A DNA stretch of 64,000 nt from positions 186,001 through 250,000 of IMG/VR virus record IMGVR_UViG_3300028920_000001, one strand, 5' to 3'. The position numbers and the translations under genes are program-made. This document shows, piece by piece, positions 4,386-40,256 of this stretch (its first letter is position 1; each line of letters begins with the position of its first letter). The notes under the pieces were generated by a model, which was not told where the DNA came from, did not search any database, and saw only the letters and a program-made list of their open reading frames with translations.

Positions 4386-4484
4386 GTCACCTCTTATGAT
4401 CGAGATACGCGGGCAGATGTTCGATCTTCGCTACGTGCGCACATGCACGCACGTCGCGCGTATACACAGATCAGAAGGTGGCGC

Positions 4485-5057
4485 ATGTATGTAGTGTATA
4501 TACCCAAACTCGAATCAGCTAGGCAGAACCTTCCACTCATCAATGTCTGCGGATACGAAGTCACTGGTAAAAAGACCACTATTTATTACCATAAAGGTCC
4601 TGAGAATCTCGATCTAATCAATAAACCAGACCATTTTAAAATGAGGTCTCTTAGTCTCAGTCGTGCGAAGTCAGCCAAGCATCTTGAATCAACCATCCTA
4701 GATCACTGGTGGCCAGCCTCTCTTCAATTTATTGAAGTTGATGAGCTTGAAGTTGACAGTGCAAACCATGGGGCAGTTAAAGAAGCTAAACAACGTGTTA
4801 AAGTTGCTAAGGAACTAATCAAAACTTTGGCAGAATGGAAGCAGTGCGTCATTCATCTCAGAGGCCAAGTCAAAAAGATCACGGACGGTTCATTCAAGGA
4901 ACTCCGTCATGACAGCAGGAGAGCGGACGCAAAAGAGTACATTAAAGACACTGTAAAGACTTGTGTTTCAGTATATCACATCAAATTTGATGAAATAGTC
5001 GATCTAGCAGAGGAAGCAGTCAAAGAACTTCAAGTTGAAAATATCATGGAAGGATAG
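4485..5057 (+). CDS. IMES-tail protein
   Basis: start MYVVYIPK after promoter motif; ends ELQVENIMEG. Confidence 0.7.
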   Translation: MYVVYIPKLESARQNLPLINVCGYEVTGKKTTIYYHKGPENLDLINKPDHFKMRSLSLSRAKSAKHLESTILDHWWPASLQFIEVDELEVDSANHGAVKEAKQRVKVAKELIKTLAEWKQCVIHLRGQVKKITDGSFKELRHDSRRADAKEYIKDTVKTCVSVYHIKFDEIVDLAEEAVKELQVENIMEG

Positions 5058-5107
5058 GCGCAAATCCAACAGGATTGCACGTATCCCGACATGGAGGTGA
5101 CGCACGC

Positions 5108-5425
5108 ATGCTGACTGAGCAAGACATGCTAAATGCCTTAGACGGAACTCCGGATGGGGCAACCGTCTTTGTGAGTTATAATGCCGGCCGGCCGCCAACG
5201 GCCAGAGCCATCCGTGAAGCCCAGCCTGCAAAAGATATGGGCCTCAATCTGCGTCATTTCGTGGGTAAGCTGTCCAGCGTGTGGATGACCAAGAAAAGCC
5301 AGATTGTAATGACCGTTCTGTGTGACAACCGGTGCAATGAAGACAATGACATGCAACCGCCGCACTACCGGACTTTCAACCCGAGTCTAGGTACCATGCA
5401 TCTCGTCAAGGTGATCGATGCCTGA
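5108..5425 (+). CDS. hypothetical protein
   Basis: promoter motif and GGAGG at 5062-5097. Confidence 0.7.
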   Translation: MLTEQDMLNALDGTPDGATVFVSYNAGRPPTARAIREAQPAKDMGLNLRHFVGKLSSVWMTKKSQIVMTVLCDNRCNEDNDMQPPHYRTFNPSLGTMHLVKVIDA

Positions 5426-5672
5426 CGTACAGCTCCTAAGAACCAAGATAGAAAATCTTGGATCAATGACTTATTGGAAAATTCATTTCATGCTAGGTCC
5501 CCAACGCTTTCTCATGACCTTCATCGACGATCATCATAAAACATATCGTCTGTACAGACGAGAGCCTCGTTATAATCCCACATCTTGTCAGGATGTAACC
5601 GACGATCCAACCTCCTCAGAGGCTATGAAAGCCGGTAAGCAAGTCTTAATTCAAGAGGTGATGGAAACATGA
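5418..5672 (+). CDS. IMES-tail protein
   Basis: ends KQVLIQEVMET. Confidence 0.7.
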   Translation: MPDVQLLRTKIENLGSMTYWKIHFMLGPQRFLMTFIDDHHKTYRLYRREPRYNPTSCQDVTDDPTSSEAMKAGKQVLIQEVMET

Positions 5673-6067
5673 GAATTTATCTCTCAATGGAAGATGAAAA
5701 CCGGTCATTCGAGACGGAACATCAATTTAGTACCGTCTCATCTGAAAACGAGCTTCATGAAATCATTAGGCGCCTGACCGTAGAAACATGGTCTAGCCTG
5801 ACTGAAAATCGTGGAGTATTGCTCCAGGCAGTGCCTCGTTCCAACTGGATACAAGCGATTAAGATCGTCCGAAATCATTCGGACATGGGCTTGAAAGAAG
5901 CTAAGGATTTCGTCGAACGAGTAATTGATGGCGTCCCATTAGCTTTTCTTGTAAATTTGAAAGATAGAGACGTAATAACTTGCGTAGAACAACTAACGCA
6001 AATTGATTGCAAAGCGACGCCATGTACCAAAGCTGAATATGATGTGTGTGAATTGATGGGGTCGTAA
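5669..6067 (+). CDS. ribosomal bL12 (L7/L12) C-terminal-like domain protein with IMES tail
   Basis: IQAIKIVR...MGLKEAKDFVE is the bL12 CTD signature; ends CTKAEYDVCELMGS. Confidence 0.75.
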   Translation: MRIYLSMEDENRSFETEHQFSTVSSENELHEIIRRLTVETWSSLTENRGVLLQAVPRSNWIQAIKIVRNHSDMGLKEAKDFVERVIDGVPLAFLVNLKDRDVITCVEQLTQIDCKATPCTKAEYDVCELMGS

Positions 6068-6393
6068 TGGAACTTATCAAATATATGGGCGAAGTTGTTG
6101 GTTGGAGTTGTCCACAGTGCGGATTTATAGACAGGCATTCCCTCACGGAACCGTCTCAGTGCAAGCAATGCCAAGAGAAATCTAGACAAAAGCGGGATCA
6201 TTGGAAACAGGACACCCCGCGTGAACAGATGGTAGTCCTGACTCAAGCTATCGCTGGCTACGCGGTATGCGCTGATGATTTGGAATGGACACCTGAACGA
6301 ATGCGCCGAGTTCTTAAGTATATTAAAGAACACTGCGACGATCTATTTGAGCTTTCCAAGTGGATGGATTCTCAATGGGAACCACGAACGTAG
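6067..6393 (+). CDS. hypothetical Zn-ribbon protein
   Basis: CPQC...CKQC. Confidence 0.65.
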   Translation: MELIKYMGEVVGWSCPQCGFIDRHSLTEPSQCKQCQEKSRQKRDHWKQDTPREQMVVLTQAIAGYAVCADDLEWTPERMRRVLKYIKEHCDDLFELSKWMDSQWEPRT

Positions 6394-6407
6394 TCATTAT
6401 TTCATAT

Positions 6408-7007
6408 ATGCCTATGTTGACACACAGGCCCGAAACTATTGACTTTGAAAATGGTGAATTTCCGGATTTGGATGATTTGCCAGATGGCACAGCTAGTGGC
6501 TGCGTTTGGATGATCAATAATGGCACTCCCACACCAGTGTTGGTTATGGATAATGCTCATCAAATTATTGATCATCTCATCACGTGGGCCGAAGAAAAAC
6601 CCGTAGAATGGTTTGACTTAGCCATTAAACGCAAAGATGGTAAATATATTATAGCTCTTCTTCCGAAGTTGCACAAATCAATTGAAAGATGGAGAATTGC
6701 TTTTCAACTTCAATATGGCTATCCATATCCTGAAAAAGACCCGAATATCAGGATTCTTTTCAAGCCAATCCACTTCGTCTCAGGAAGCGCCAACTGCTTA
6801 GACGAATTGACTTTGCAGGAAAATATGGAGGTAGGCTTCTTGGATACCAAGCATCTTAACTATCAAAATCCGGACAAGATGGGTGAGCATATTAAGTTTA
6901 TTGGCCCCTTCAAGCAAGAACATGACCCTTACTTTAATACTTATCTCGACCAAGCTTTGGGGGACGCAACAGAGCCCACTGAGAAATCTCATAGATTTGC
7001 AACATGA
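6408..7007 (+). CDS. hypothetical protein
   Basis: long ORF in co-oriented run. Confidence 0.65.
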   Translation: MPMLTHRPETIDFENGEFPDLDDLPDGTASGCVWMINNGTPTPVLVMDNAHQIIDHLITWAEEKPVEWFDLAIKRKDGKYIIALLPKLHKSIERWRIAFQLQYGYPYPEKDPNIRILFKPIHFVSGSANCLDELTLQENMEVGFLDTKHLNYQNPDKMGEHIKFIGPFKQEHDPYFNTYLDQALGDATEPTEKSHRFAT

Positions 7008-7056
7008 TTTGCAAATCATGTGTGTAGGTTTCCGATCGTCGCACGTACCACCGGAC

Positions 7057-7341
7057 ATGGCGAACAACGTACCCAACGTCCCCAATCTTGACGCAATGGA
7101 CCAGGACGAACTGTGGGACTTTTGGAAGAAATTCCATCGCCCAAGTCGCAAAGACGCAGCTTGGCTGGTTGGAGACCGTCGTCCAGGGTACACCAATTTT
7201 GCATCAACTCTGGCCAATTACGCCTGTAATAAGGCGGTTGCCATGAAGTGTCGGCTGGACGGCAATATTCAAGGAGCCGAATGCTACGAATCGGCTGCAG
7301 AAATCTGCTACAAAGAACTGCCTGAGGATCTAAAGTGGTAA
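7057..7341 (+). CDS. hypothetical protein (leaderless)
   Basis: AGGT-N14-CGTA-N9-ATG upstream. Confidence 0.65.
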   Translation: MANNVPNVPNLDAMDQDELWDFWKKFHRPSRKDAAWLVGDRRPGYTNFASTLANYACNKAVAMKCRLDGNIQGAECYESAAEICYKELPEDLKW

Positions 7342-8716: not shown

Positions 8717-9064
8717 GGCCCAGTGGCGGAATGGCATACGCAGGGGATTTCAACGGAATCCCATCAACAGAAATGTTGATCCAAAAAAACCCTGGAAATT
8801 GCTGGAAACCCCTTAGAGCCTGATACACCACAACATGACTGGAAACGGTAAGTGTGACGGTTTGAAAAGAATCAGGATTGGGCAATCAGCAGCCGAGCCC
8901 CTTGACTGGGGAAGGTTCAGAGACTCGCGCTCAGGGCACCTGACCAGATAATGCTGAAGGTGAAGATACAGTCCAGACCACAACGGAAACGGCTCGCGAA
9001 ATCGAGAGTGGTACGAAAATCCCTCGCCCTAACGGGATTGTGAGTTCGAATCTCACCTGGGCTA
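8717..9064 (+). tRNA. trnL: tRNA-Leu(UAA) interrupted by a group I intron
   Basis: acceptor GGCCCAG/CTGGGCT-A; exons 8717-8750 and 9016-9064 join to GGGGA-TTTAAAA-TCCCT; long variable arm; GTTCGAATC T-loop. Confidence 0.9.
8751..9015 (+). ncRNA. group I self-splicing intron (265 nt, no ORF)
   Basis: P AATTGCTGGAAA, Q AATCAGCAG, R GTTCAGAGACT, S AAGATACAGTCC; P1 GGGATTT/GAATCCC with U.G at the splice site; terminal G at 9015. Confidence 0.9.
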
Positions 9065-9171: not shown

Positions 9172-9244
9172 GGGAGTATAGCTCAGTCGGCAGAGCCACC
9201 GGCTTTTAACCGGTAGGTCCAGAGTTCGAGTCTCTGTGCTCCCA
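9172..9244 (+). tRNA. trnK: tRNA-Lys(UUU)
   Basis: GGGAGTA/TGCTCCC acceptor; ACCGG-CTTTTAA-CCGGT anticodon arm; GTTCGAG T-loop. Confidence 0.92.
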
Positions 9245-10790: not shown

Positions 10791-10885
10791 GGGGGAGTAG
10801 CTTAGCCTGGTTCAAAGCACCGGCCCTATAACCCGGTTAGCGTCTGATAAGCGCGAGATCGTGGGTTCAAATCCCACCTCCCCTA
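10791..10885 (+). tRNA. trnI: atypical tRNA-Ile with two anticodon-like hairpins (UAU and GAU)
   Basis: acceptor GGGGGAG/CTCCCCT-A; T-arm GTGGG-TTCAAAT-CCCAC; hairpins ACCGG-CCCTATAAC-CCGGT and GCGT-CTGATAA-GCGC. Confidence 0.75.
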
Positions 10886-10931
10886 CCGAAGATCTCGGTG
10901 CCTGTGTCGTATCCGATTATGGAGGCGATCC

Positions 10932-11482: not shown

Positions 11483-11531
11483 CGACCGGAAATTCTGGCT
11501 CATGCGCCGTACGCATTCGCGGAGGTGACGC

Positions 11532-19570: not shown

Positions 19571-19971
19571 TGAGTGTAGTAGGCAAAGCCCGGGATGAGG
19601 TTCTCAAGATCGTGCTCGAGCATGGCTTCACTGAAGAAGCAGTGAGGCAAGTCAAGAGCTTGGGCTATTTCTTCTATCTCAACACCAACGGCCATCACAA
19701 ATTCCTTGATCGCCGATATGCCCGTATTTTCACTAGTCACTTGATGAGAGTGGTAAGCGGGAGTGAACGACGGGCAGAGTTCATGAAGCTAGAGCCTCAC
19801 ATTTACTTGGAGCATTTCTATAATTTGAGCAATCACCCGGAAGTGACCACTAAAAGCTTGCGTGCCTGGTTAGAGGACCAATTTGGAACAGGCAGTCAAT
19901 TTGGCCTGGAAGGGACGTCCCGAGAATTTTCCAGTAAGATCCAGGCTTTACTAGAACAGCCGAAATCGTAG
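19570..19971 (+). CDS. hypothetical protein
   Basis: TAATG coupling to the ligase. Confidence 0.65.
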   Translation: MSVVGKARDEVLKIVLEHGFTEEAVRQVKSLGYFFYLNTNGHHKFLDRRYARIFTSHLMRVVSGSERRAEFMKLEPHIYLEHFYNLSNHPEVTTKSLRAWLEDQFGTGSQFGLEGTSREFSSKIQALLEQPKS

Positions 19972-20013
19972 ATCCCATCCGATCGTGCGTATCTCTGATC
20001 GGAGGTAACGCAT

Positions 20014-27124: not shown

Positions 27125-27299
27125 TTGGGATTCTCCTGGTTTGTCTGAGCGGAACAAGGTCCGCGTCGCAGTCCAGGGTACGTCGGCCCGCAGCGGATCT
27201 GCGCGGGTCTCTTCCCAATCAATTTTGCAACCTATTACTCAAAAACAAGACGGAAGCCGTATTGATCTGCGCGTACAGCAGCGCACGGAGGTCAAATCA

Positions 27300-28281: not shown

Positions 28282-28386
28282 AGCGAACAACCGCCAGCGA
28301 CACAGCCCGGACAGCGTAAGTTGTCCGGGTCGCCGCGTATCTGGCGTAGGGCTGCAAGTCTCACGTTCGTCATCGTACCAATCAGT

Positions 28387-28623
28387 ATGATGAACGCAAC
28401 CGACGTGATGACGAGCAGGTTTTCGAAGCCATCCCGAATTCAGCAATTTCGGACCATCAACGAAACCGAGACTGCTGGAACCGTGGATGGGTATGAAGTT
28501 GACCCACACACCGCGTTCATCGTCTGTAGTGTCTACGACAAGGTCAATTCCCAAAACCAGCAAGCACTTGATCAACTTTCTACCCGAGACCTGATCGCAG
28601 TTTCCATTCAAATGGTGATGTAA
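28387..28623 (+). CDS. hypothetical protein (leaderless)
   Basis: CGTA-N9-ATG. Confidence 0.6.
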   Translation: MMNATDVMTSRFSKPSRIQQFRTINETETAGTVDGYEVDPHTAFIVCSVYDKVNSQNQQALDQLSTRDLIAVSIQMVM

Positions 28624-29363: not shown

Positions 29364-29437
29364 TGGGACCCGTCGGGTTCGAACCGACAACAGCCCGCTT
29401 ATGAGGCGGGGGCTCTGACCGATTGAGCTAGAGTCCC
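29364..29437 (-). tRNA. tRNA with CAU anticodon (elongator Met or Ile2)
   Basis: GGGACTC/GGGTCCC acceptor; CCCGC-CTCATAA-GCGGG; GGTTCGAACCC; paired 1:72, so not initiator. Confidence 0.88.
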
Positions 29438-29694
29438 TTGAGTTCAGAAAACCATACAGTAAAGCTTTGAATCAATTATGTGGGAAGAAATTGATTGAAA
29501 TATCCCTATATACTTTGAAGCCGAGCTTCAAAAATTCCCTCGATGAAGCTCGGCTCGGCGGAAATCTCAGTGTGGCCATCGTACCTATCGGTATGAAACG
29601 GAACGCGGCCAGCATTTGCATGTCGATCGCATACGTGTGCCTGCCGCCGATCTGCGGCCCTGTAGATGCGCGCATTTCGCGCGTATCAGAACAC

Positions 29695-29945
29695 GTGCGG
29701 ATAGCGAATTGACGCTAACACTCCGACTCCGGTACTATCCGGTTGAAATGTCACGAAAGCCACTGAGGTCCGGCAGGCTGAGTAAGTCCGGTGTCCCTTT
29801 GGTGAAGGCAGCCCCCGGAAGGAGAGAAACCTTCCGGGCGGTGGCTTATACGTCTGAGACTATCTTTGAAAACTAGCTTTTGAAGGTCCTTAGGAAAAGA
29901 AGCGTTAGATACTTTTGAGCCGGGCTCCGAAGAACCCGGCTCTAG
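29695..29945 (+). ncRNA. candidate structured non-coding RNA
   Basis: promoter motif 29664-29685 with no ATG or SD following; stems AAGCCAC/GTGGCTT and CCCGGAAGG/CCTTCCGGG; hairpin at about 29917-29942. Confidence 0.4.
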
Positions 29946-30357: not shown

Positions 30358-30490
30358 GGTTGCGTTACCTCCAGTGTCCGATACGTTGCGCAGCAGGAGA
30401 CTTCCGGCAGCGGAAATGAGCAGCAACCAAACGTAAACGCTGATGGGGAAGAGTAGCAGCAGCGCGAATTAACTGATTTTAAATACTTTT

Positions 30491-30552
30491 CCCCGAAGCG
30501 TTCCTACTTCGTCCGGGTTTATCACTCTGTGTGAAATTACCGTCCGCTTCAA
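30491..30552 (-). ncRNA. conserved structured RNA motif, copy 1
   Basis: similar to 37979-38040; own promoter AAGT-N14-CGTA. Confidence 0.55.
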
Positions 30553-30849
30553 TCAAGTGTACGCATCAACTTGATCAACTTGCGGATTTTATAGGTCTAT
30601 GCCTAAAGAAAACAAACATCTTGGACGGCAGGACACCGCTCCCTCCCGCAGGAACCGTCTGGTTCAGAAGCGTTTGGTTCGTCCTGCCGCCAGGCCCTTA
30701 CTGTCGCTCACTGCGCCCCGTCGGAACGGATTACGTGAACCGGGAACCCACAGACTGTTACGCGGCAATTGATCGCATTTCCGCCTGTCTTTTGAAGGTG
30801 ATCCCCTAAAGCCAAAGAAAATGCGCCCATTTCGCGCGTAAAAAGGAAC

Positions 30850-31056
30850 ATGCGAGTTTCTCAGTTGATCGACGCTTTGAGCAAGCTGGACCAAGACGCG
30901 TTCGTTCGAGTTTCGGTTGGATGGGCTGCAGACACGGCCATCAGCAGTCGGTACGACGATACGTTGACGGTAGTGGCCAAAGGAGACACCGTGGAGATCG
31001 GTGGTTGGCTTCCCAACTGTGGCACTGAGTTGGAAATCTACGAGGACGAAGAATAA
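30850..31056 (+). CDS. hypothetical protein
   Basis: CGTA-N9-ATG. Confidence 0.7.
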   Translation: MRVSQLIDALSKLDQDAFVRVSVGWAADTAISSRYDDTLTVVAKGDTVEIGGWLPNCGTELEIYEDEE

Positions 31057-31280: not shown

Positions 31281-31364
31281 ACAGGACTGAGGTCGCCGTT
31301 TCATTGCGGGTAAGCTCCTCAAAGACGGGCCGGAGATCATCCGGCCCGAGCCGTATCTCTCATC

Positions 31365-31652
31365 ATGGCCAATTCGATTGTTTGTTTCAGGCTCAGAAAA
31401 GGTGAAGCACCGGAGCTTGCTTCACCGACCATCTATCGAAATTGGAAGCGAGCCGTTCGAATCAACCTGGGCACCAAGGGCACCAAGGGACGTTTGGTCC
31501 TCGAAACCCAAAACAGCAAGGTCTTCGAGGCTGACGATTTGATTTGGGTTGGTGACGGATACGGCCCCTGTCATCTGGTTTTCTTGGATGTTGAGGCAGA
31601 CTTCCAAGAAACCTTGGCCTCTATTCGCAAACGAATACCGTCCGCAGATTGA
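31365..31652 (+). CDS. hypothetical protein
   Basis: CGTA-N9-ATG. Confidence 0.7.
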   Translation: MANSIVCFRLRKGEAPELASPTIYRNWKRAVRINLGTKGTKGRLVLETQNSKVFEADDLIWVGDGYGPCHLVFLDVEADFQETLASIRKRIPSAD

Positions 31653-31686
31653 CGCACAGCACGCGTATCTTTGACTGGAGGCACAC

Positions 31687-31896
31687 GTGAGAATTAAGGA
31701 CTTGCTCGCCCGGTTAGTGCACTATGATCCTGAAATGGAGGTTGTAGTGGTCAACGAAGAGACTGGCAGGCTGGAAGAGGCTTGCCTCGTCCAGGTTTGT
31801 AACACCAACCTTGTGCCAGACACGGGCGAAGAACAAGAAGGACCATTCCTAGTCATAAACTGGGTGCCAGACTGGGTGCCAGACGAAACTCGGTAA
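31687..31896 (+). CDS. hypothetical protein
   Basis: cassette promoter and SD. Confidence 0.75.
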   Translation: MRIKDLLARLVHYDPEMEVVVVNEETGRLEEACLVQVCNTNLVPDTGEEQEGPFLVINWVPDWVPDETR

Positions 31897-31934
31897 ATCT
31901 CACGCTAGTCCGCGTATCCGGGACTGGAGGCAAC

Positions 31935-32237
31935 ATGCAGGCTCAGATTCATTCAGCAACATACTGCGACAAAGATGAAGCAGTGTGGTCTGGATACGAC
32001 CCGGATCACGCACACCATGTGTTGACCCCAGAAGGTAGCCTTCTCGTCGTCCGCAACGACGAGGACGGCCCTGTGGTCTTTGCCCTACCCGGGGCCACGA
32101 ACAAGCTTATGGCGGCCGTCGAGCAGTTCCTTTCCCCGGACCCGGCAACGGGAGACGTGAGCTACGACGAGTCTGCATTCGACAGCTCTGCCCACACGGC
32201 AGCCCAGTTGTTGGCGGATTACCTACAAAACAAGTAA
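31935..32237 (+). CDS. hypothetical protein
   Basis: cassette promoter and SD. Confidence 0.75.
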   Translation: MQAQIHSATYCDKDEAVWSGYDPDHAHHVLTPEGSLLVVRNDEDGPVVFALPGATNKLMAAVEQFLSPDPATGDVSYDESAFDSSAHTAAQLLADYLQNK

Positions 32238-32281
32238 GGAAATCGCGCGTCAGCACGCGTATCCACGTCTGGAGGCAACAC

Positions 32282-32503
32282 GTGGATTTGACGATCATCA
32301 TCCTGTACGACGATGGGCTGTGTGAACACTACGTTGGTGCTTGGCCTGGCCCAATCCCTTCGGACGTAAGAAAAAGCCTGGCGAGGCAGTACCGGGCCGT
32401 CATTGACGGCGAACCTGGTTCTCACGAAGAGAATGCTCGTACCATCAGCTTCCGTGAAGTCCGGGCTGGTGCAGGTGATTTGGTCAACATCTGGAACTCG
32501 TAG
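32282..32503 (+). CDS. hypothetical protein
   Basis: cassette promoter and SD. Confidence 0.75.
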   Translation: MDLTIIILYDDGLCEHYVGAWPGPIPSDVRKSLARQYRAVIDGEPGSHEENARTISFREVRAGAGDLVNIWNS

Positions 32504-32541
32504 ATTCTACGCAAGCACGTGTATCCGTGACTGGAGGTAAT

Positions 32542-32817
32542 GTGGCGAAACCGAAATACGAAGCACTTCAAATCGACGACGCTTGCTGCGAACTCATCGC
32601 ACTCGACAAGGTAGTCCAAGTCGGATCCTGTCTCATCGGTATACTGGGAGGCAGAGCCGGTCAGTATACGCTCATTGGTCCAGCCGATGAGGTCAAGATG
32701 GTCAAGATGCTCTACGATGAGCACGAAAAGGAACTGAACGCACGGGAAGAGGATTACGACGAAGACGAGGGTGAATGGTTCGATTTGGTTCAAATCGCTC
32801 GTAAAGCGTTAGAGTAA
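32542..32817 (+). CDS. hypothetical protein
   Basis: cassette promoter and SD. Confidence 0.7.
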   Translation: MAKPKYEALQIDDACCELIALDKVVQVGSCLIGILGGRAGQYTLIGPADEVKMVKMLYDEHEKELNAREEDYDEDEGEWFDLVQIARKALE

Positions 32818-32855
32818 ATCACGCGCCAGTATACGTATCCGTGGGTGGAGGCGAC

Positions 32856-33077
32856 ATGCGATACGTAAGAATCAACTGTAACGTGAGCCCGGCCCGATAC
32901 AGCGGAACCCTATATGCGGGCACTGTGGCCACAGTGCGCGTTGTGAAGAGGTGGCAGCTGAAGATCGAGCTGCATGATGGCAATTGCTACTGGTTATACA
33001 AAGACCAGGTGGACGAAATCACACAGCAGGAATACGCAGCACAGCATCCGGTGATGGAGGCAACACATGAAACCTGA
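32856..33077 (+). CDS. SH3-like protein with degenerate IMES-like tail
   Basis: ends EITQQEYAAQHPVMEATHET. Confidence 0.65.
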   Translation: MRYVRINCNVSPARYSGTLYAGTVATVRVVKRWQLKIELHDGNCYWLYKDQVDEITQQEYAAQHPVMEATHET

Positions 33078-33348
33078 GCAAGTTCGCGAAGCGATCGAAG
33101 CGGTCTACGAGGTCCGGGACTATTCGGGTCGTGCCATGTTCGGCAAGCAGTGTGTGGGCATCGAGGTAGATGACCCAACCAAGGCCATACTCGAAATCGT
33201 GGAGGAGTTCTACCGGTCCACGGACACGGAAGAAGAGCCAGGCGCACTTCCGGACTTGTGCTACGAACTGAAGAATCATCGGGTTGATATGATGGGTCTC
33301 GGCAGCATCCTCTACTGGCCCAGCATCCCGTGGGAAGCGGACGAGTAG
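33067..33348 (+). CDS. hypothetical protein
   Basis: YSGRAMFGKQC...DMMG...YWP; SD. Confidence 0.75.
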   Translation: MKPEQVREAIEAVYEVRDYSGRAMFGKQCVGIEVDDPTKAILEIVEEFYRSTDTEEEPGALPDLCYELKNHRVDMMGLGSILYWPSIPWEADE

Positions 33349-33388
33349 ATCTCGCGCCAGCACGCGTATCGGTGAGTGGAGGCAACAC

Positions 33389-33802
33389 ATGGCGCAGATC
33401 ATCAGCAGGCGAGAGCACCACGAAGAGAAGGTCTACAACCTGGCCTTTCATTGGCGGGACGACCCGGGTGCCGGTTTTTCCTTCCCGTGTGACAAGGACG
33501 GGAACGTGGACGAAGACCACGTTCCCGAGAGCTATTACAAGTGCCTAAGCGGCGAATACGACGTCGTGGCTGATGGGGTAGTCTGCTACACCCATCGGTG
33601 GACGTCGCCAACCGTCATCAGGTGCACTTGTGGCGCAGAGGTGGAACTGTACGGATTCACGAACACCTGCCACGTATGTGAGGCCGACTACAACATGAGC
33701 GGCCAGAGGTTGGCTCCTCGATGCCAATGGGGTGAGGAAACCGGCGAGTCACTGTCGGACATCATGGCTGCGGACACCGACCCATGGGGAGGCGACTACT
33801 GA
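33389..33802 (+). CDS. hypothetical Zn-binding protein
   Basis: cassette promoter; CTCG...CHVC. Confidence 0.75.
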   Translation: MAQIISRREHHEEKVYNLAFHWRDDPGAGFSFPCDKDGNVDEDHVPESYYKCLSGEYDVVADGVVCYTHRWTSPTVIRCTCGAEVELYGFTNTCHVCEADYNMSGQRLAPRCQWGEETGESLSDIMAADTDPWGGDY

Positions 33803-34023
33803 TGGCGTGCTATCAGCGTGAACAAACCGGCAACTGCAACCACCATCAGTGTCAGTTCAGTTCGGATACTGATCACGGATACGAATGCGTGGAACTAGCT
33901 TCCGGTTTCTGTGAATGTGGTGAAGACTGCCTCGCCAAGTGTCCTCACTCTTGGCGAACTTCTGCTCGGGCAGAACAGGCAGACACAGCTTTTCGCAGGA
34001 AGTACCCAGAAATCAAATTGTAG
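33802..34023 (+). CDS. Cys-rich hypothetical protein
   Basis: coupled ORF with GGAGG. Confidence 0.6.
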   Translation: MACYQREQTGNCNHHQCQFSSDTDHGYECVELASGFCECGEDCLAKCPHSWRTSARAEQADTAFRRKYPEIKL

Positions 34024-34061
34024 ATCTTGCGCCAATCCGCGTATCCGTGATTGGAGGCAAC

Positions 34062-34271
34062 ATGAGCCACGTCACTCTGAATCAGGAAGAGGCTGAACAA
34101 GCCTCCAACTTCCTGTCTGCATACAGCGCTTACTTGGATAACCACGGATACAAACATGATCCGGATTGGAAGACCAAGATAGACCAAGCTGAAAAGCTGA
34201 TTGATATCCTGGAAGGACGACGACCCTGCGCTGAGTGTGGTTACTACCCTTGCTGTTGTGAGGCGACATGA
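34062..34271 (+). CDS. hypothetical protein
   Basis: cassette promoter and SD. Confidence 0.7.
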   Translation: MSHVTLNQEEAEQASNFLSAYSAYLDNHGYKHDPDWKTKIDQAEKLIDILEGRRPCAECGYYPCCCEAT

Positions 34272-34519
34272 CGTACCAAGTCTTCTATACCAACCACGGA
34301 TACTACAGCTCAGAGCAACCGGTCAATTTCCAGGATGCCCTGACCGTGGCGCGTGCCAGCGGTTTCGAAGCCCGAATCGACAGAGACGGGCAGCCTATTG
34401 GTGCCTGGTCTCCCTTGTACGGCTACAGGTCACTGTTCTACGTCCGGTTCTTCGGGGAGCTACCCACCGAAGCCGAAATTGACGTGGCTTTCGAAGAACT
34501 GAGACAATTCGGCTGGTAG
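34268..34519 (+). CDS. hypothetical protein
   Basis: SD, ATGA overlap. Confidence 0.7.
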   Translation: MTYQVFYTNHGYYSSEQPVNFQDALTVARASGFEARIDRDGQPIGAWSPLYGYRSLFYVRFFGELPTEAEIDVAFEELRQFGW

Positions 34520-34558
34520 ATTTCACGCTAGGCGTTGTATCCTTGACCGGAGGCGACG

Positions 34559-35135: not shown

Positions 35136-35498
35136 CGCGTAGATCGCCAGTCATCTGGCGTAAAGGCGAACATGACACTGCATGAACAACTTAAGACCCT
35201 GAATGATGATTTCGGGGTTGTCACTCACACCCGTGACAAGGATGAATTCAGCAGTGGGGAATTGTGGGACAACCTCGTATATACCTGCTTGCAAAGGCAG
35301 AGGCATGAACAAGTGCATCTTTCCTTTGTGATTAGGTATGATGCGTTGGGTGTTGTTGCCTATGACACCGTAGTCACGACCAAAATGATCACTCAGGAGC
35401 AAGCTCGTCAGTACCTTGACTTACTGAATCAAGTCACTGAAAAGGAAGAACAAGAAGACGCGTAGATCGCCAGTCATCTGGCGTAAAGGCGAACATGA
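35136..35498 (+). repeat. exact 40-bp direct repeat (35136-35175, 35459-35498) flanking one gene
   Basis: CGCGTAGATCGCCAGTCATCTGGCGTAAAGGCGAACATGA twice. Confidence 0.9.
35172..35465 (+). CDS. hypothetical protein
   Basis: between the 40-bp repeats. Confidence 0.75.
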   Translation: MTLHEQLKTLNDDFGVVTHTRDKDEFSSGELWDNLVYTCLQRQRHEQVHLSFVIRYDALGVVAYDTVVTTKMITQEQARQYLDLLNQVTEKEEQEDA

Positions 35499-35944
35499 GG
35501 CAGGCATTGATCACGGCAAGTCAGCAGAAGCCACTTCCGCCTTGGGTGCGGGATGTGGCAGATGCCGCCAGGGCTGGCGGAACTCTTGTTCCGGAATCCA
35601 CCTGGACCTGGCTTGGTGCCTGGCTGGCCACCCTAGCGGAAACCGAGCTGGACCTAGAGGATTGTCTCCCTCAGATCCTGTCGGCCGAATTCATCTATCT
35701 CCAGAACCACGCTAGATCCCAGGACCACCGAGAGTGGATCGAGGACCAGCTTCACCGAATCCAGGACGAAAACCCGGGCCAAACTGTTTGGTTCATTCCG
35801 GTTGACGAGCTGCTCTGCCTCCATCTGCAGGATGAGTACGGCAGTGACGGAATCCAGCTGGAGCGACTGGTGTTCGTGGGGACCGAACCCGAGCTACTTG
35901 CGGCCATTCATCAATTGACGCACGTCGACCTGCCGGTGCCGTAA
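35495..35944 (+). CDS. hypothetical protein
   Basis: cassette promoter. Confidence 0.75.
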   Translation: MRQALITASQQKPLPPWVRDVADAARAGGTLVPESTWTWLGAWLATLAETELDLEDCLPQILSAEFIYLQNHARSQDHREWIEDQLHRIQDENPGQTVWFIPVDELLCLHLQDEYGSDGIQLERLVFVGTEPELLAAIHQLTHVDLPVP

Positions 35945-35959
35945 ACACAAGAGGAAAGC

Positions 35960-36211: not shown

Positions 36212-36305
36212 GCAGGTGTGATTGGTGCGGAGGCCGAATCGTTGAGGGTGACGAGGTTCACCCCGGTTATCGAGGCTGGCCCTGTTGCGAAGACTGTAAG
36301 GCGGT

Positions 36306-36551: not shown

Positions 36552-36681
36552 GGTTTAAAGAAATATATACCATATATTGCTGCCATCATGGCCTCTGATG
36601 CGGTCTTGACCGCAATCATTTTGGTAGGAAGTTGGTACCGACTCTCGCGTAAGCCAGCTGCCTAGTCGCGTATCCAACAAC

Positions 36682-36855
36682 ATGACGAGGCTACTCATAG
36701 CTCTGTTAGTGGCAGTTGGGCTTTACATCTTGCTGTTCATCTTCTTACCCATCACCCAGGAAACGGCCGTCGTCATCCCCCTACTCGGCAAGTTCGAGTG
36801 GTCCTTTGGTGGGCTAGGGTGTACGGGCATTTTCGCGATCATTATGGGGAAGTGA
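36682..36855 (+). CDS. small membrane protein
   Basis: CGTA-N9-ATG; hydrophobic. Confidence 0.6.
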   Translation: MTRLLIALLVAVGLYILLFIFLPITQETAVVIPLLGKFEWSFGGLGCTGIFAIIMGK

Positions 36856-36890
36856 GCGTAAATTTTAGGGTGGGGATCGTAGAAAAACCT

Positions 36891-37283
36891 ATGCTAAGAT
36901 TCGCTGCGATATATATCCTAACCATCGTTGTCAGTCTCCCATTGATGATTGCGGGAGGAGTGTGGGCAGCGCAAGCATACTTAGAACATAAGCAAGAAAT
37001 ATCTACCCAGGAGCCAGCTCCATTACCTGTCCTAGTTCTTCCTAAGACTACTACAGTCTCGGCTCCCTCGGCTCAGCCAACTGCCTCTGCAAAGCCGGCT
37101 CGAGAGAAACCTAAGCTCCACCCGACCAAGCCACGTTTTATCCGTAAAGCTCCCAAGCGGAAGCACGGACCGTGCTTTTACGGGGCGAATGGTCAATGCT
37201 ATCCGATAGACGCCTACTCAAACTGGCGTGCAACACCAGTGATGCGTCCAGACGGCACCTATCCGGAGCCCGGCGAATACTGA
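36891..37283 (+). CDS. membrane-anchored Pro/Ala-rich protein
   Basis: N-terminal TM segment, Pro-rich linker, CFYGANGQC. Confidence 0.65.
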   Translation: MLRFAAIYILTIVVSLPLMIAGGVWAAQAYLEHKQEISTQEPAPLPVLVLPKTTTVSAPSAQPTASAKPAREKPKLHPTKPRFIRKAPKRKHGPCFYGANGQCYPIDAYSNWRATPVMRPDGTYPEPGEY

Positions 37284-37472
37284 GATAGTCGTCCTCCTAC
37301 GGGCGTGCCACGGGTTGGTTACCGCTGGCCGGCCAAGGCACCAATATGCTGTGGTCTTGGACACCGCTGCACATATGATACTGTAGTGATAGCGGACGGC
37401 TATCCCACTTGAGTGTACGCTTGAGCCCGGCCAACTTCCGTCAGCCGGGCTCTGTGGGTTGGGTTGTCGGGA

Positions 37473-37874
37473 TCAGACCCCGAACTTCTCGTGAATCTGG
37501 GCGGCAGCTTCGTCGTCCAAGCAGGCCGTCTGCTCTGCTCGGTAGTGGGCCGTCAACTGCTTGCTGTACTTGCAGACGATCCCTTCGATCTTGCCGGACT
37601 CTTCCTCGGTCAGCTCCTCACCTGCGATCACCTTCTCGGCCAGCCGGCTGCCGTTCACGGCATGGCTGCTCATGAAGCCACGCTTGTTCTTCCACTTGGT
37701 GTCTTTGGTCTCCCGCTCGTCCTCGGTCTGCCGGCGATACAGGACCAGCAGGCACTGCAGGCGGAAGTCTGCGTCGTCGGCCAGCCGTTCGGCGACCTGC
37801 TTCTTGGTGACGTAGGGGTAGCTGTTGTTGGCTGCGGGGTTGATCGCGAAAGTCGGAATCTTGGTGTCGGTCAT
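37473..37874 (-). CDS. RQTEDE...GFMSSHA family, paralogue 3
   Basis: promoter and GGAGG upstream. Confidence 0.85.
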   Translation of the reverse strand: MTDTKIPTFAINPAANNSYPYVTKKQVAERLADDADFRLQCLLVLYRRQTEDERETKDTKWKNKRGFMSSHAVNGSRLAEKVIAGEELTEEESGKIEGIVCKYSKQLTAHYRAEQTACLDDEAAAQIHEKFGV

Positions 37875-37978
37875 TGTCGTTGCCTCCAGCCAAGGATACG
37901 GAGTTCGACCCGAGACCTACGCAGGGAATCTGTCGCGAAGCGTGAATCGGCCGGCTGGTCCGGATTTCGGACAGATCT

Positions 37979-38040
37979 CCCCGAAGCGTGTCTACTCCGT
38001 CCGGATTTACGGCCTTGTGCCGGGTCACCGTCCGCTTCAA
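37979..38040 (-). ncRNA. conserved structured RNA motif, copy 2
   Basis: own promoter AGAT-N14-CGTA; covarying inner stem. Confidence 0.55.
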
Positions 38041-38362
38041 AGATAAGTACGTAAAGATAAGGAAGATCTGCACCGATGACTGCCGCTGCGAGGTGGTTTT
38101 CCCACGGCTTCTTCGGCCCGTTCGGTTCTAGAAACCGCACGGTTGCCATCGGTGCAGTGAAGTATACGAAGTGGCCACCATGATTTCCGGCTGCGGAAGT
38201 GCGGATCCGGCCTGCGTATCCGACAGTGACAGCGGGCACGGTTGGCTTCTCAGAGCCGACCCAACTTCCGCTTGCAGCCCCTTGCCGTGACAGCCCACCT
38301 CCCGCCCGGACCATCGCGGCCGGGCGGGAGGAAATCTTGGGGTACGACAGGTACACGAGGAC

Positions 38363-38620
38363 ATGATGGCTGATTTGACCAAGCTCTGCGCCAGCAAAGA
38401 TCCGGATGACCTGTTTACCGTTTGCAATGGGACTTGCACGGCCGGGTTCGACCAAGACGGGTCTACGGGCCGAGAGATCTACGAGAACGGAATCCGACTC
38501 GGCCGAAAGCTCGGGTCAAACCCAAGAGCCAAGCTCTTCACGTACTCAAACGGCCAAACGGCCTGGTTTTTCGTGTACACAGACGAAGACGAGCTGGTCA
38601 CCCGGCTGAACACCATCTGA
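38363..38620 (+). CDS. hypothetical protein (paralogue of 21218)
   Basis: NGIRLGRKLGSNP..KLF. Confidence 0.7.
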   Translation: MMADLTKLCASKDPDDLFTVCNGTCTAGFDQDGSTGREIYENGIRLGRKLGSNPRAKLFTYSNGQTAWFFVYTDEDELVTRLNTI

Positions 38621-38668
38621 CCGGAAATCTCACGCCACGCCAGGTAGAAGAAACCGGAGGCAATTGAA

Positions 38669-39037
38669 ATGAAAAAGACGACCAAAGCTCACCTGATCGC
38701 GGTTTCCCTTCTCGGACTGGCCATGGCAGCAGCCCCTGCGTCCATGATTCTCAACGCGCCTGATGCCAACGCGCGGGTCGCCCATCCGGCTCCTTCCGCA
38801 AGCGAAGCTACTGTGGCTCCGGAGGCGTCCGTTCCGGCTCCTCCGGCCGTCGTTGAGCTGGACGAGGTCAAGGTCGTGGGGAACCCGAAGCCTGCGACGT
38901 CGGCCCGTCCTGCGGCCAAGAAGACCCACAAGAGCTGGACCTGTCACCGGGTGCCGCTCGCGCAGAACCGGCCTGCCCTGGCGACCAAGGACAGCGCCCC
39001 GGCCAACCAGACGGTCCAGCTCTGCGAGTGGCTGTAA
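38669..39037 (+). CDS. secreted Pro/Ala-rich protein
   Basis: signal peptide MKKTTK-hydrophobic; two C-terminal Cys. Confidence 0.7.
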   Translation: MKKTTKAHLIAVSLLGLAMAAAPASMILNAPDANARVAHPAPSASEATVAPEASVPAPPAVVELDEVKVVGNPKPATSARPAAKKTHKSWTCHRVPLAQNRPALATKDSAPANQTVQLCEWL

Positions 39038-39521
39038 GTCTCTTCGGGCAGGGGAGGCCCAAAACCTCCCCTGCCCGGCCTCCACCTCGGAGGTCCCAAC
39101 GGACTCGGCGTATCCGAGAGTGGAGGCGACACATGGTAGTTCTTTCACTCATCGCGATTTTCGTTCCCATCATTTGGGTAGCGTGTCCGAACCGGCCCTA
39201 TCGCCGAGATCTGGCCTGATGGCCAAAAGACGACCGGTGGCCTGCTAGGCGTTCATGGCCAGTCTGCCTTAGCGTTCCACCTAGAGCCCGGCCAGCGGAA
39301 GTTGGTCGGGCTCAAGCGTATCAGAGATTGGAGGCAACGCAAAATGAAGAGATGCCCACACTGTGGAAGGACTGACTGTGCGGTTCATGCCGAGGACGGT
39401 GGAGTGACCGAACTCTGCAGCGTGACTGGCAAGGTCATTCCTCCGGCCAAGAAGACCCGTTAAGGGTCCACGGCGTAAATGTGATAGCCTGCGGTGTACC
39501 TGAAATTGGAGGCAACGCGAA

Positions 39522-39836
39522 ATGAGCGAAGAGCATCATCCTAGGTACTGCAAGACCGTCGATCTCATCGGGCGCATTCGAAAAGCCCCTGCTGAGATCA
39601 GCTATCGCGATGCGGCCGTCAAGCTGATTCAGGAGGGAGCCTGTACGCCCGAGGAAGCGTTCTTCGCGGAAATGGGTGCCAGAATCTTGAACAAACCCTC
39701 CTGTGAGGTCTGTGGCGGTTTCTTGACCAACGACGAGGCCCGGGTCGGTGTCCTGTGCACCGGATGCCACGACGAGATGTTCGGCGACCGCGGACCGGTC
39801 GCACATCTCGGTACCCGACCCGTACGGATGTGGTGA
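39522..39836 (+). CDS. hypothetical Zn-finger protein
   Basis: cassette promoter; CEVC...CTGC. Confidence 0.7.
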   Translation: MSEEHHPRYCKTVDLIGRIRKAPAEISYRDAAVKLIQEGACTPEEAFFAEMGARILNKPSCEVCGGFLTNDEARVGVLCTGCHDEMFGDRGPVAHLGTRPVRMW

Positions 39837-39845
39837 GGAGGCAAG

Positions 39846-40049
39846 ATGCAAGATCTCGAGAGCCGTATCAACCAATTGCTGGAAGACTCTGACCGGGCCG
39901 ACAAGATGGGCCTGACCAACCGCAGCATGAAGCTGCTCAGTCAGGCGGCCGAACTCGAAACCGAGCTGCTGAAGAAGCGCAAGGAAGCGGCCAGGGCCCG
40001 GTCCGTCGAACGGATGGTGCGAGAAGCTCTCGCCGATTGTGGTCAGTAG
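39846..40049 (+). CDS. hypothetical coiled-coil protein
   Basis: GAGGAGG SD. Confidence 0.7.
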   Translation: MQDLESRINQLLEDSDRADKMGLTNRSMKLLSQAAELETELLKKRKEAARARSVERMVREALADCGQ

Positions 40050-40088
40050 ATCTTCCAAGCCTTCCCGTATTCGTGACTGGAGGTCACG

Positions 40089-40256
40089 ATGGCGCAAATT
40101 GGTTGGAAGGGTCAAGGGCAGGATGGGTCAAAGCTCTGCGTTCAACGGCATGGGCACAAGCGCGGAAAGGCCCGTCGTTCATACAACGCGGCTGAAAAGG
40201 CCGCTGAGACGCGAGTTCGGCAGGCCGGCAAGAAAATCTGCCGAGATTGGCAATAG
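40089..40256 (+). CDS. 55-aa basic protein
   Basis: cassette promoter and SD. Confidence 0.6.
   Translation: MAQIGWKGQGQDGSKLCVQRHGHKRGKARRSYNAAEKAAETRVRQAGKKICRDWQ

What the first reader, a model, noticed from the sequence alone, without database searches (positions are those of the whole stretch)
4441..40100. Fixed-geometry promoter A[AG][AG]T-N14-YGTA-N9 followed by either ATG or GGAGG
Seen: more than 25 intergenic sites with constant spacing, e.g. 5062, 10890, 11490, 13089, 19970, 31646, 31895, 32240, 32502, 32816, 33347, 34022, 34518 and 40048. Exactly 9 nt after YGTA comes either a start codon (7057, 13120, 28387, 30850, 31365, 35172, 36682) or the SD GGAGG. The upstream gene's stop often supplies the first element (TAGAT, TAAAT). 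Inference: one promoter class, ECF-sigma-like (CGTA -10) or read by a phage sigma/RNAP, giving mRNAs that are leaderless or begin almost at the SD. Each gene is then a self-contained expression cassette.
Basis: partly seen in the sequence, partly recalled or inferred. Interest (0 to 1): 0.7.

Follow-up and report, generated by a model that had tools for sequence, protein, structure and literature searches.

The report
Phage promoter class with fixed start geometry
A 427-kb uncultivated marine-sediment phage and its relatives carry about a hundred copies of a rigid two-box promoter-like signal placed so that transcripts should begin exactly at the start codon or at the first G of the ribosome-binding site; the pattern is real and conserved, but no RNA data exist to prove where transcription starts.

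Summary
The window is G000:186001-250000 of a 426,960-bp jumbo phage with terminal repeats.

The full motif is C-G-n-A-R-R-T-(C/T), then N13, then (C/T)-G-T-A-(T/C). There are about 100 sites in the genome against about 8 in a reversed-sequence control. The spacer is rigid: N14 only. Exactly 9 nt after YGTA comes ATG (36 sites) or GGAGG (20 sites), and almost never at any other offset. A pyrimidine precedes that position.

About 80% of sites lie in a GC-rich block of small genes, transcribed divergently from window 4427/4441.

Two other complete about 400-kb phage genomes have the same motif and geometry. Orthologous upstream regions keep only the two boxes and the Shine-Dalgarno (SD) sequence. 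A conserved non-coding element begins exactly at the predicted +1.

The phage encodes an ECF-like sigma factor and two other sigma-like proteins. No phage RNA polymerase was found.

Best reading: a phage-specific promoter class, probably read by host core polymerase plus a phage sigma. It would give leaderless or SD-first mRNAs. The sigma assignment and the start sites are inferred, because no RNA runs were listed. I rate it a new variant of a known kind.

The parts
4396..4472 (.). Divergent pair of class-A sites (4427 minus, 4441 plus). This is the switch point between the leftward and rightward transcribed halves of the block.
   Evidence: Both score 17.5 bits on the position weight matrix (PWM). 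An SD follows 3-5 nt after the predicted +1.
5059..5093 (+). Class-A site 5062, SD-first type, serving gene 5108-5425.
   Evidence: 21.0 bits. Orthologous sites in G001 and G002 keep only the boxes and the SD.
7023..7057 (+). Class-A site 7026, leaderless type. The ATG at 7057 opens a 94-aa ORF.
10887..10921 (+). Class-A site 10890, SD-first, directly after tRNA-Ile (10791-10887). Serves gene 10932-11285.
11487..11521 (+). Class-A site 11490, SD-first, serving gene 11532-11936.
   Evidence: 21.7 bits
13086..13120 (+). Class-A site 13089, leaderless, serving gene 13120-13380.
   Evidence: 19.6 bits
18409..18443 (+). Class-A site 18412, SD-first (GAGG), serving the ATP-dependent DNA ligase gene 18458-19570. 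The upstream stop codon lies in the first box.
   Evidence: 26.7 bits. Pfam ligase domains. The orthologous site in G001 is aligned.
19967..20001 (+). Class-A site 19970, SD-first, serving the PolX-like gene 20014-20958.
   Evidence: 25.8 bits. Pfam DNA polymerase beta domains.
27169..27285 (.). Divergent sites 27200 (minus) and 27254 (plus). They serve paralog-family gene 26648-27157 (minus) and KH-domain gene 27300-27584 (plus).
   Evidence: 27.5 and 15.7 bits. Paralogy. KH domain.
28315..28387 (+). Tandem sites 28318 and 28356. The second is leaderless for gene 28387-28623. The first box of 28318 lies in the loop of a GC hairpin.
29559..29695 (.). Sites 29562 (plus, leaderless), 29653 (minus) and 29664 (plus). 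The last two stand back to back, their first boxes forming an imperfect 18-bp inverted repeat.
30372..30445 (.). Back-to-back sites 30403 (minus, SD-first, serving paralog gene 29962-30357) and 30414 (plus).
30461..30584 (-). Site 30581 (minus), followed from the predicted +1 at 30550 by a conserved non-coding element.
30816..30850 (+). Class-A site 30819, leaderless, serving gene 30850-31056.
31331..34549 (+). Run of nine one-gene cassettes: sites 31334 (leaderless), then 31646, 31895, 32240, 32502, 32816, 33347, 34022 and 34518 (all SD-first). The genes are 50-137 aa and are not paralogs of one another.
   Evidence: 21-26.7 bits each. No paralogy among these genes. Spacers are partly conserved among the sites.
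35138..35495 (+). Sites 35141 and 35464, both leaderless (genes 35172-35465 and 35495-35944). They are identical from the first box through the ATG, and a perfect 6-bp hairpin lies in the spacer.
36648..36891 (+). Sites 36651 (first box AAGC) and 36860, both leaderless (genes 36682-36855 and 36891-37283).
37887..38072 (-). Site 37918 (minus, SD-first, serving paralog gene 37473-37874) and the upstream site 38069 (minus), whose predicted +1 at 38038 starts the second copy of the conserved non-coding element.
38155..38228 (.). Back-to-back sites 38186 (minus) and 38197 (plus). Their first boxes form an 18-bp palindrome.
38329..40631 (+). Sites 38332 (leaderless), 38625, 39091, 39299, 39477 and 40048 (SD-first), 40274 (GTG at +1), 40535 and 40600. 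This is the last cluster before GC drops to about 40%.
46896..46930 (+). Isolated class-A site in the AT-rich part of the window, leaderless, serving gene 46930-47217.
   Evidence: 14.2 bits
61909..61922 (-). Example of the second class, which lacks a first box (TGTAWWNT-N5-ATG). It is leaderless for the dNMP-kinase-like gene 60998-61909.

Best explanation
The motif is a phage-specific promoter class, here called class A.

- **Elements.** A first box CGnARAT(C/T) and a second box (C/T)GTA(T/C) are separated by a rigid spacer: 14 nt between ARRT and YGTA.
- **Start site.** The polymerase would start 10 nt after the A of GTA, at a purine preceded by a pyrimidine.
- **Transcripts.** That purine is either the A of the AUG (a leaderless mRNA) or the first G of an extended Shine-Dalgarno sequence, GGAGG(TGA), giving leaders of 9-15 nt.
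- **Polymerase.** It is most likely read by host core RNA polymerase carrying a phage-encoded sigma. The best candidate is the 219-aa ECF-like sigma at G000:44101-44760. That gene has a sigma-70-type promoter of its own, not a class-A site. The implied cascade is host sigma-70, then the phage sigma, then class-A genes.
- **Genes served.** DNA repair and recombination genes (RuvA-like, RuvB, ligase, PolX) and a GC-rich, fast-changing block of small unrelated genes, many with a private promoter.

Shown: the motif, its geometry, its orientation, its conservation, and the sigma genes. Inferred: promoter activity, the exact +1, which sigma reads it, and the timing.
For: - **Enrichment and rigid geometry:**
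- **Layout:** sites are co-oriented with their genes and arranged divergently around 190.4 kb.
- **Start position:** Y at -1 in 91% of sites and R at +1.
- **Leaderless ORFs:** SD-like sequences are missing (2 of 40), ATG outnumbers GTG 40 to 4, and Pfam models begin at residues 1-19 (RuvB, DFP, ligase-like).
- **Relatives:** the same motif occurs in G001 (60 against 9 control) and G002 (73 against 5). GGAG lies exactly at N9 in 44 of 62 G001 sites and 28 of 67 G002 sites.
- **Footprints:** orthologous upstream regions of three phages keep only the two boxes and the SD at fixed spacing.
- **Conservation boundary:** conservation of a non-coding element begins at the predicted +1.
- **Polymerase and sigma:** no phage RNA polymerase was found by Pfam. 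The sigma has a Sigma70_r2 domain above cut-off. Its best structural matches are ECF sigma region 2 bound to -10 DNA (Z 7.6) and full-length ECF sigmas.
- **Co-occurrence:** the composite pattern with ATG occurs 5-36 times (control 0-2) in the complete or larger records whose sigma is at least about 52-54% identical, and only 1-2 times in three fragments (G009-G011). It is absent from records with more distant sigmas.
- **Sigma gene's own promoter:** TTGCGC-N17-TAGAAT in G000 and TTGTTA-N17-TATAAT in G001 lie upstream of the sigma gene.
- **Geometry versus known sigmas:** from my own knowledge of E. coli sigma-E (GTC at -12 to -10), GTA at -12 to -10 matches ECF geometry. phiEco32 gp36 promoters carry AATGTA centred at -11.5 (PMC12276001).
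Against: - No transcript data: no RNA run was listed.
- The first box is not the AAC motif typical of ECF promoters, and the spacer is 1-2 bp shorter than in SigW-type promoters.
- The sigma's C-terminal domain gives no Pfam region-4 hit, and the structural Z-scores are modest.
- Co-occurrence with the sigma is confounded by phage relatedness. Records with about 51-52% identical sigmas (G014-G017) lack the first box.
- Two other sigma-like genes are also conserved in the relatives.
- About 40 of 103 sites have neither ATG nor SD exactly at +1.
- An SD at the very 5' end of an mRNA is unusual.
Confidence: 0.72

Rival explanations
1. It is a promoter, but read by a host sigma (a stress-induced host ECF sigma or an unusual housekeeping sigma) or by the phage RpoD-like sigma (396 aa, G000:65859-67049), not by the 219-aa ECF-like sigma.
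For: - The block resembles early-gene regions of other large phages, and early genes need a sigma already present in the cell.
- The RpoD-like sigma has regions 2, 3 and 4 and homologs in G001 and G002.
- Sigma-70-type consensus promoters are not enriched anywhere in the genome (152 against 134; 11 against 9.2 in the block), so it is unclear what drives early genes.
Against: - CGTA with no T at -7 is unlike the -10 element of group 1-3 sigmas.
- The motif follows the phage clade, not one environment.
- The RpoD-like protein is only 33-38% identical among phages that share an identical motif, whereas the ECF-like sigma is 58-62% identical.
- The host is unknown, so a host sigma cannot be examined.
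Confidence: 0.17
2. Sigma appropriation, as at T4 middle promoters. The first box, centred near -30, would be bound by a phage activator, for example the conserved 261-aa protein with two region-4-like HTH domains (G000:282361-283146). A sigma would read only the YGTA box.
For: - If +1 is as predicted, the first box spans -34 to -27, the position of the T4 MotA box (from my own knowledge).
- A -35-less class with the same TGTA and the same distance to ATG exists (40 sites at N5, control 0).
- G014 has GTA-N9-ATG without the first box. The two boxes are therefore separable.
- The 261-aa protein is conserved at 65-71% identity.
Against: - The 261-aa protein is equally conserved in G014 and G016, which lack the first box.
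- Homologs of MotA or AsiA were not searched for.
- A one-length spacer is also what a single two-domain sigma would impose.
Confidence: 0.08
3. The motif is mainly a recombination or cassette-junction sequence, or an RNA-level signal (a processing site or translational enhancer), with no promoter activity.
For: - Junctions in 31.6-34.5 kb share spacer sequence while flanking unrelated genes.
- Block gene content differs greatly between relatives. This recalls the promoter-stem-loop cassettes of T4-type phages (from my own knowledge).
- A subset of sites has inverted repeats around the second box, with an anti-SD sequence in the spacer.
Against: - Most sites genome-wide and in relatives have unrelated spacers, with only two short boxes kept at fixed distance. 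That is the signature of protein-DNA recognition.
- Predicted folding is no stronger than for random segments in G000 and G002 (mean z -0.68 and -0.56, against -0.56 for controls).
- Leaderless-type genes have no SD, so they need a 5'-terminal AUG.
Confidence: 0.03

Closest known systems
ECF (group 4) sigma promoters, for example B. subtilis SigW (TGAAAC-N16-CGTA) and E. coli sigma-E
   Same: - Bipartite, with a strictly fixed spacer.
- The -10 box has a CGT(A) core about 10-13 nt before the start.
- The -35 box has an A-rich core after a G.
- The candidate reader has an ECF-like region 2 by Pfam and by fold.
   Different: - The first box is GnARAT, not the AAC motif.
- The boxes are 1-2 bp closer together.
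- The sigma gene does not sit behind its own promoter class.
- No anti-sigma factor was identified (none was searched for).
- About 100 targets carry a fixed position of the start codon or SD, which ECF regulons do not show.
phiEco32 gp36 sigma and its middle/late promoters (AATGTA centred at -11.5; PMC12276001)
   Same: - A phage-encoded, very divergent sigma works with the host core polymerase.
- The -10 box contains TGTA at almost the same distance from the start.
- The -35-less class here (aaaTGTAWWnT) is nearly the same word.
- gp36 appears among the structural matches (9m7y chain F, Z 5.7).
   Different: - Class A adds a conserved first box.
- The geometry to the start codon is fixed.
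- No sequence similarity to gp36 was detected.
- The genome is more than five times larger than phiEco32-type genomes (SU10, a relative, is 77 kb) and unrelated.
Leaderless middle/late transcripts of Thermus phages phiYS40 and P23-45 (from my own knowledge; not read here)
   Same: Many phage genes would be transcribed from promoters placed so that the mRNA starts at the AUG.
   Different: - Those promoters are extended -10 promoters read by the host sigma-A.
- Here there is a two-box class and a parallel SD-first form.
PeSL promoter-stem-loop cassettes in hyperplastic regions of T4-type phages (from my own knowledge)
   Same: Small unrelated genes each have a private promoter, in a region whose gene content changes fast between relatives.
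   Different: - The promoter is not of sigma-70 type.
- Stem-loops occur only at a subset of sites.

Membership tests
ECF-sigma-type promoter | Two boxes with a spacer of essentially one length | tested here: met
   N14 gives 123 hits; every other spacer from N9 to N20 gives 18-45.
ECF-sigma-type promoter | -10 box with a CGT core | tested here: met
   Position weight matrix: C/T 0.68/0.26, then G 0.99, T 0.98, A 0.99.
ECF-sigma-type promoter | -35 box with the AAC motif, 16-17 nt before CGT | tested here: not met
   The first box is C-G-n-A-R-R-T with no conserved C after the A run. The distance from the last A to CGT is 15 nt.
ECF-sigma-type promoter | A group 4 sigma (regions 2 and 4 only) is encoded and recognises the motif | tested here: inconclusive
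   Region 2 scores 34 bits against a 24-bit cut-off and matches ECF region 2 structurally (Z 7.6). The C-terminal helical domain gives no Pfam region-4 hit. Recognition cannot be tested with these tools.
Leaderless mRNA | Transcript begins at the A of the AUG | not testable with these tools
   No RNA run was listed. Indirect support: ATG at one fixed distance, Y at -1, and a conservation boundary at +1 in a non-coding element.
Leaderless mRNA | No Shine-Dalgarno sequence upstream; AUG strongly preferred | tested here: met
   An SD-like word occurs in -20 to -1 in 2 of 40 cases. ATG 40, GTG 4.
phiEco32 gp36-type promoter | A single AATGTA box near -11.5, with no -35 requirement | tested here: not met
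   Class A has a conserved first box and no AA before YGTA. The separate -35-less class does match: aaaTGTA, with T at -6 in 44 of 51 sites.
T4-type PeSL cassette | Sigma-70 early promoter plus stem-loop between small ORFs | tested here: not met
   Sigma-70-like sites: 11 against 9.2 expected. Terminator-like hairpins: 14 against 15.2. Folding z-scores are no different from controls in G000.
T4 middle (MotA-dependent) promoter | Activator box near -30 plus a sigma-70 -10 box (TAnnnT) | tested here: inconclusive
   The box position fits. The -10 box of class A is CGTA(T/C)(C/T) with no conserved T at the hexamer end. MotA and AsiA homologs were not searched for.

The most novel reading that the evidence does not exclude
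A whole clade of uncultivated 360-440-kb phages uses its own minimal sigma to start transcripts at single-nucleotide precision, either on the AUG or on the first G of an 8-nt Shine-Dalgarno sequence.

In a fifth to a quarter of cassettes the promoter spacer carries the anti-SD word. Read-through RNA from the upstream gene would then fold over the SD, with the -10 box in the loop. Only RNA born at the gene's own promoter would be translated.

This would be a way to tie translation to the promoter of origin in a terminator-less array of swappable one-gene cassettes.
Probability: 0.15. Interest if true: 0.8.

Novelty: new variant of a known kind. Interest (0 to 1): 0.6.

Why it matters
Huge environmental phages are known almost only from sequence, and their gene-expression programmes are unknown.

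This motif gives a directly testable promoter for one such clade: a 219-aa sigma plus a 35-bp DNA element. It also gives a way to call true start codons for about a hundred genes and a marker for a temporal class.

The strict coupling of promoter position to the start codon or SD is unusual. If confirmed, it would be a natural, compact, orthogonal expression cassette. It would also show leaderless and 5'-terminal-SD initiation used side by side.

Tried and rejected
- **RNA evidence:** two searches for sequencing runs found only DNA metagenomes (marine sediment, wetland, marsh) and no RNA run.
- **Phage polymerases:** Pfam searches for a T7-like polymerase and for beta and beta-prime domains found nothing in the genome. 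The T7-like search also rang in none of the 14 control genomes, so it shows little.
- **Cultured relatives:** no DNA match among 50,697 phage records. The sigma and the two-HTH protein hit only one uncultured 485-kb phage.
- **Sequence search of solved structures with the sigma profile:** no sigma hit.
- **RNA-structure explanation:** folding z-scores of the sites equal those of random segments in G000 and G002. Inverted repeats around the second box occur only in a subset.
- **Tandem duplication as the source of the repeated junctions:** rejected, because the flanking genes are not paralogs.
- **Sigma-70 promoters and intrinsic terminators:** not enriched.
- **Simple pattern counts in 35 further sigma-bearing records:** uninformative, because background equals signal. 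The composite pattern with ATG was needed.
- **Rfam:** no family for the conserved non-coding element. RNAalifold on five copies did not recover its variable hairpin because of alignment gaps.
- **Literature:** three full-text searches found no description of this motif.

Full report
**Context.** The window is G000:186001-250000 of a 426,960-bp virus record with direct terminal repeats, rated complete. It comes from a marine-sediment metagenome. The genome is 34-42% GC over most of its length. The stretch 180-227 kb (window 1-41000) rises to 44-60% GC, and a second island lies at 330-340 kb. The phage carries 37 tRNAs and a tmRNA.

- Aligning the sites shows a longer motif. An invariant G lies two bases before ARRT, usually preceded by C. 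T/C follows YGTA, and a pyrimidine stands immediately before the downstream signal.
- Genome-wide, G.ARRT-N14-YGTA gives 123 hits, against 19 and 12 on the two strands of the reversed sequence.
- The spacer is rigid. N14 gives 123 hits; every other length from 9 to 20 gives 18-45.
- After YGTA, ATG lies at exactly 9 nt in 36 sites (34 open an ORF of at least 40 codons). GGAGG lies at exactly 9 nt in 20 sites and at no other offset.
- A position weight matrix (PWM) finds 103 sites at 12 bits or more, against 8 in the control.
- At 21 of these 103 sites the TAA or TAG stop of an upstream ORF of at least 40 codons lies inside the first box.

**Distribution.** About 80% of the sites lie between 140 and 227 kb. 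They are on the minus strand up to 190.4 kb and on the plus strand after it. A back-to-back pair at window 4427/4441 marks the switch. The class continues leftward beyond the window. It ends on the right near 40,600, where GC drops.

In 31.3-37 kb and 38-40.6 kb almost every gene of 39-149 aa has its own site. In 4.4-22 kb one site serves several genes. The small genes are not paralogs of one another, so tandem duplication does not explain the repeated junctions.

**Evidence that it is a promoter with the predicted +1.**
1. It consists of two short conserved boxes at a fixed distance with free sequence between them, always co-oriented with the downstream ORF.
2. Pyrimidine at -1 and purine at +1.
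3. Leaderless-type ORFs lack SD-like words (2 of 40) and start with ATG 40 times against GTG 4. Pfam models for RuvB, DFP and a ligase-like nucleotidyltransferase begin at residues 1-19 of these ORFs.
4. Two other complete phage genomes, IMGVR_UViG_3300032782_000001 (G001, 436 kb) and IMGVR_UViG_3300012980_000004 (G002, 393 kb), carry the motif 60 and 73 times, against 9 and 5 in controls. It is again clustered in GC-richer blocks. GGAG lies exactly 9 nt after YGTA in 44 of 62 G001 sites and 28 of 67 G002 sites.
5. Upstream regions of orthologous genes in the three phages keep only CGCA(A/G)AT, CGTATC and GGAGGTG, in register. The same holds for the ligase gene.
6. Two class-A sites in the window (30581 and 38069, minus strand) and one in G002 are followed by a conserved non-coding element. 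Its conservation starts at the predicted +1, while upstream only the boxes are shared.
7. In 26-41.5 kb neither sigma-70-type promoters (11 against 9.2) nor intrinsic terminators (14 against 15.2) exceed expectation. This motif is the only enriched signal there.

**Who reads it?** Pfam finds no T7-like polymerase and no beta or beta-prime domains. The T7-like search rang in no control genome, so it carries little weight. The genome has three sigma-like genes:
- a 396-aa RpoD/RpoS-like protein (65859-67049, minus strand);
- a 219-aa protein with an ECF-like region 2 (44101-44760);
- a 261-aa protein with two region-4-like HTH domains (282361-283146).

The 219-aa protein belongs to a family of more than 250 metagenomic proteins, many on 200-436-kb contigs. 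Its model has mean pLDDT 81.8. The model matches ECF sigma region 2 bound to -10 DNA best (4lup, Z 7.6). It also aligns over its full length with SigH, AlgU, sigma-E and phiEco32 gp36. The Z-scores are modest, and its C-terminal domain gives no Pfam region-4 hit.

G001 and G002 encode homologs that are 58-62% identical. The composite pattern with ATG occurs 5-36 times (control 0-2) in the complete or larger records whose sigma is at least about 52-54% identical, and only 1-2 times in three fragments (G009-G011). Records with more distant sigmas have essentially none. This co-occurrence is confounded by relatedness.

G014 has a 52% identical sigma. It keeps a GTA-N9-ATG peak (66 against about 28) but has no first box. 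The two boxes are therefore separable.

The sigma gene itself lies behind a sigma-70-type promoter in G000 and G001, which suggests a cascade. This was seen by eye in two of three genomes, and such promoters are not enriched overall.

From my own knowledge of sigma-E/-10 complexes, GTC occupies -12 to -10. Here GTA occupies -12 to -10 if +1 is the A of ATG. phiEco32 gp36 promoters carry AATGTA centred at -11.5 (PMC12276001).

**What the class serves.** Class-A sites precede a RuvA-like gene, RuvB, a DFP-domain protein, a ligase-like enzyme and a DUF2201 protein. In the window they precede an ATP-dependent DNA ligase, a PolX-like polymerase, a KH protein and an RNA-repair HAD protein. They also precede many small genes with no Pfam hit. 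This looks like an early or middle set rather than a structural one. The timing is inferred.

**A second class.** The word TGTAWWNT followed by 5 nt and ATG occurs 40 times (17 at 6 nt, 0-6 at other distances, 0 in the control). It has no first box and has T at -6 in 44 of 51 sites. It is spread over the whole genome. Together the two classes predict roughly 100 leaderless genes.

**Comparison and novelty.** The motif works like an ECF-type or phiEco32-type phage sigma promoter. It fails the AAC-box criterion for ECF promoters. Unlike phiEco32 promoters, it has a first box.

The fixed placement of AUG or SD at +1 across about 100 sites and several genomes has no described counterpart in the three literature searches I ran. 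Leaderless phage transcripts are known from Thermus phages (from my own knowledge).

I rate it a new variant of a known kind. Confidence is about 0.9 that it is a promoter (the best and two rival readings together), 0.72 for the full cascade reading, and about 0.5 that the 219-aa sigma reads it.

Noticed in passing
window 30461-30550 (-) and 37949-38038 (-); L029:19797-19886; L095:5543-5632; L096:3406-3495 (-): A conserved non-coding element of about 75-90 nt. It begins GAAGCGGACGG, followed by a short hairpin whose stem differs in every copy but stays complementary, then CCGGACGGAGTAGG and GCTTCGGGG. In G000 it lies upstream of two members of a paralogous gene family. Two unrelated-looking viral contigs (286 kb and 17 kb) also carry it. 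No Rfam family matches. It is a candidate new phage RNA or cis-regulatory leader.
   Followed up: partly
L025-L030 (G001, G002); window sites such as 18412 and 31895: The promoter spacer often holds the anti-SD word CTCC or CCTCC: G001 12 of 47 sites, G002 9 of 54, G000 8 of 65, against 0-1 in a control window. In G001 this extends to 9-17-bp inverted repeats with the -10 box in the loop and the SD in the 3' arm. Read-through RNA from upstream would hide the SD. Alternatively these may be 3' hairpins of the upstream message.
   Followed up: partly
window 29640-29667, 30390-30417, 38173-38200: Bidirectional promoter modules. Two first boxes stand back to back, 4 nt apart. They form an 18-bp palindrome of the type ATTTCCG-nnnn-CGGAAGT at 38186/38197 and a near-perfect one at 30403/30414; the 29653/29664 pair is imperfect.
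   Followed up: partly
window 26648-27157 (-), 29962-30357 (-), 37473-37874 (-): A three-member paralogous family (39-73% identity) on the minus strand inside the plus-strand block, each gene with its own class-A site. Several copies also occur in G001 and G002. No Pfam hit. The long plus-strand ORFs that overlap them are probably spurious.
   Followed up: partly
whole genome; examples at window 43515, 48922 and 61922 (-): A second, -35-less promoter-like class: aaaTGTAWWnT, then 5 (sometimes 6) nt, then ATG. There are 57 sites against 0 in the control. It resembles the phiEco32 AATGTA box.
   Followed up: partly
window 8739-8996 (+): A group I intron (Rfam RF00028, 65 bits) lies 176 nt upstream of tRNA-Lys (9172-9244). 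The host gene of the intron was not identified.
   Followed up: no
window 10791-10887 (+), 29364-29437 (-); G000:80541-80615 and 75832-76185: The window holds a 97-nt tRNA-Ile (anticodon TAT) and a tRNA-Met on the minus strand. Elsewhere the genome has 34 more tRNAs, a tRNA with anticodon TCA (called SeC by ARAGORN, possibly an opal suppressor) and a tmRNA with tag ANDNASLAIAA. Conserved genes read intact under code 11.
   Followed up: no
window 1-41000 versus 41000-64000; G000:330-340 kb: A compositional island. The promoter-rich block is 44-60% GC in a genome that is otherwise 34-42% GC. In G001 and G002 the blocks are 52-59% GC against 46-52% elsewhere. Few block genes are shared between the three phages.
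   Followed up: partly
window 35138-35175 and 35461-35498: Two promoter regions are identical from the first box through the ATG. Each includes a perfect 6-bp hairpin in the spacer, and they precede unrelated ORFs.
   Followed up: no
window 39088-39140, 40532-40566, 37406-37440 (-), 30749-30783 (-): Very high-scoring class-A sites (20-28 bits) with no ORF of at least 30 codons at the expected place (only a 48-aa GTG ORF 42 nt below 37437 and a 37-aa TTG ORF 20 nt below 40535). They may drive small peptides or small RNAs.
   Followed up: no
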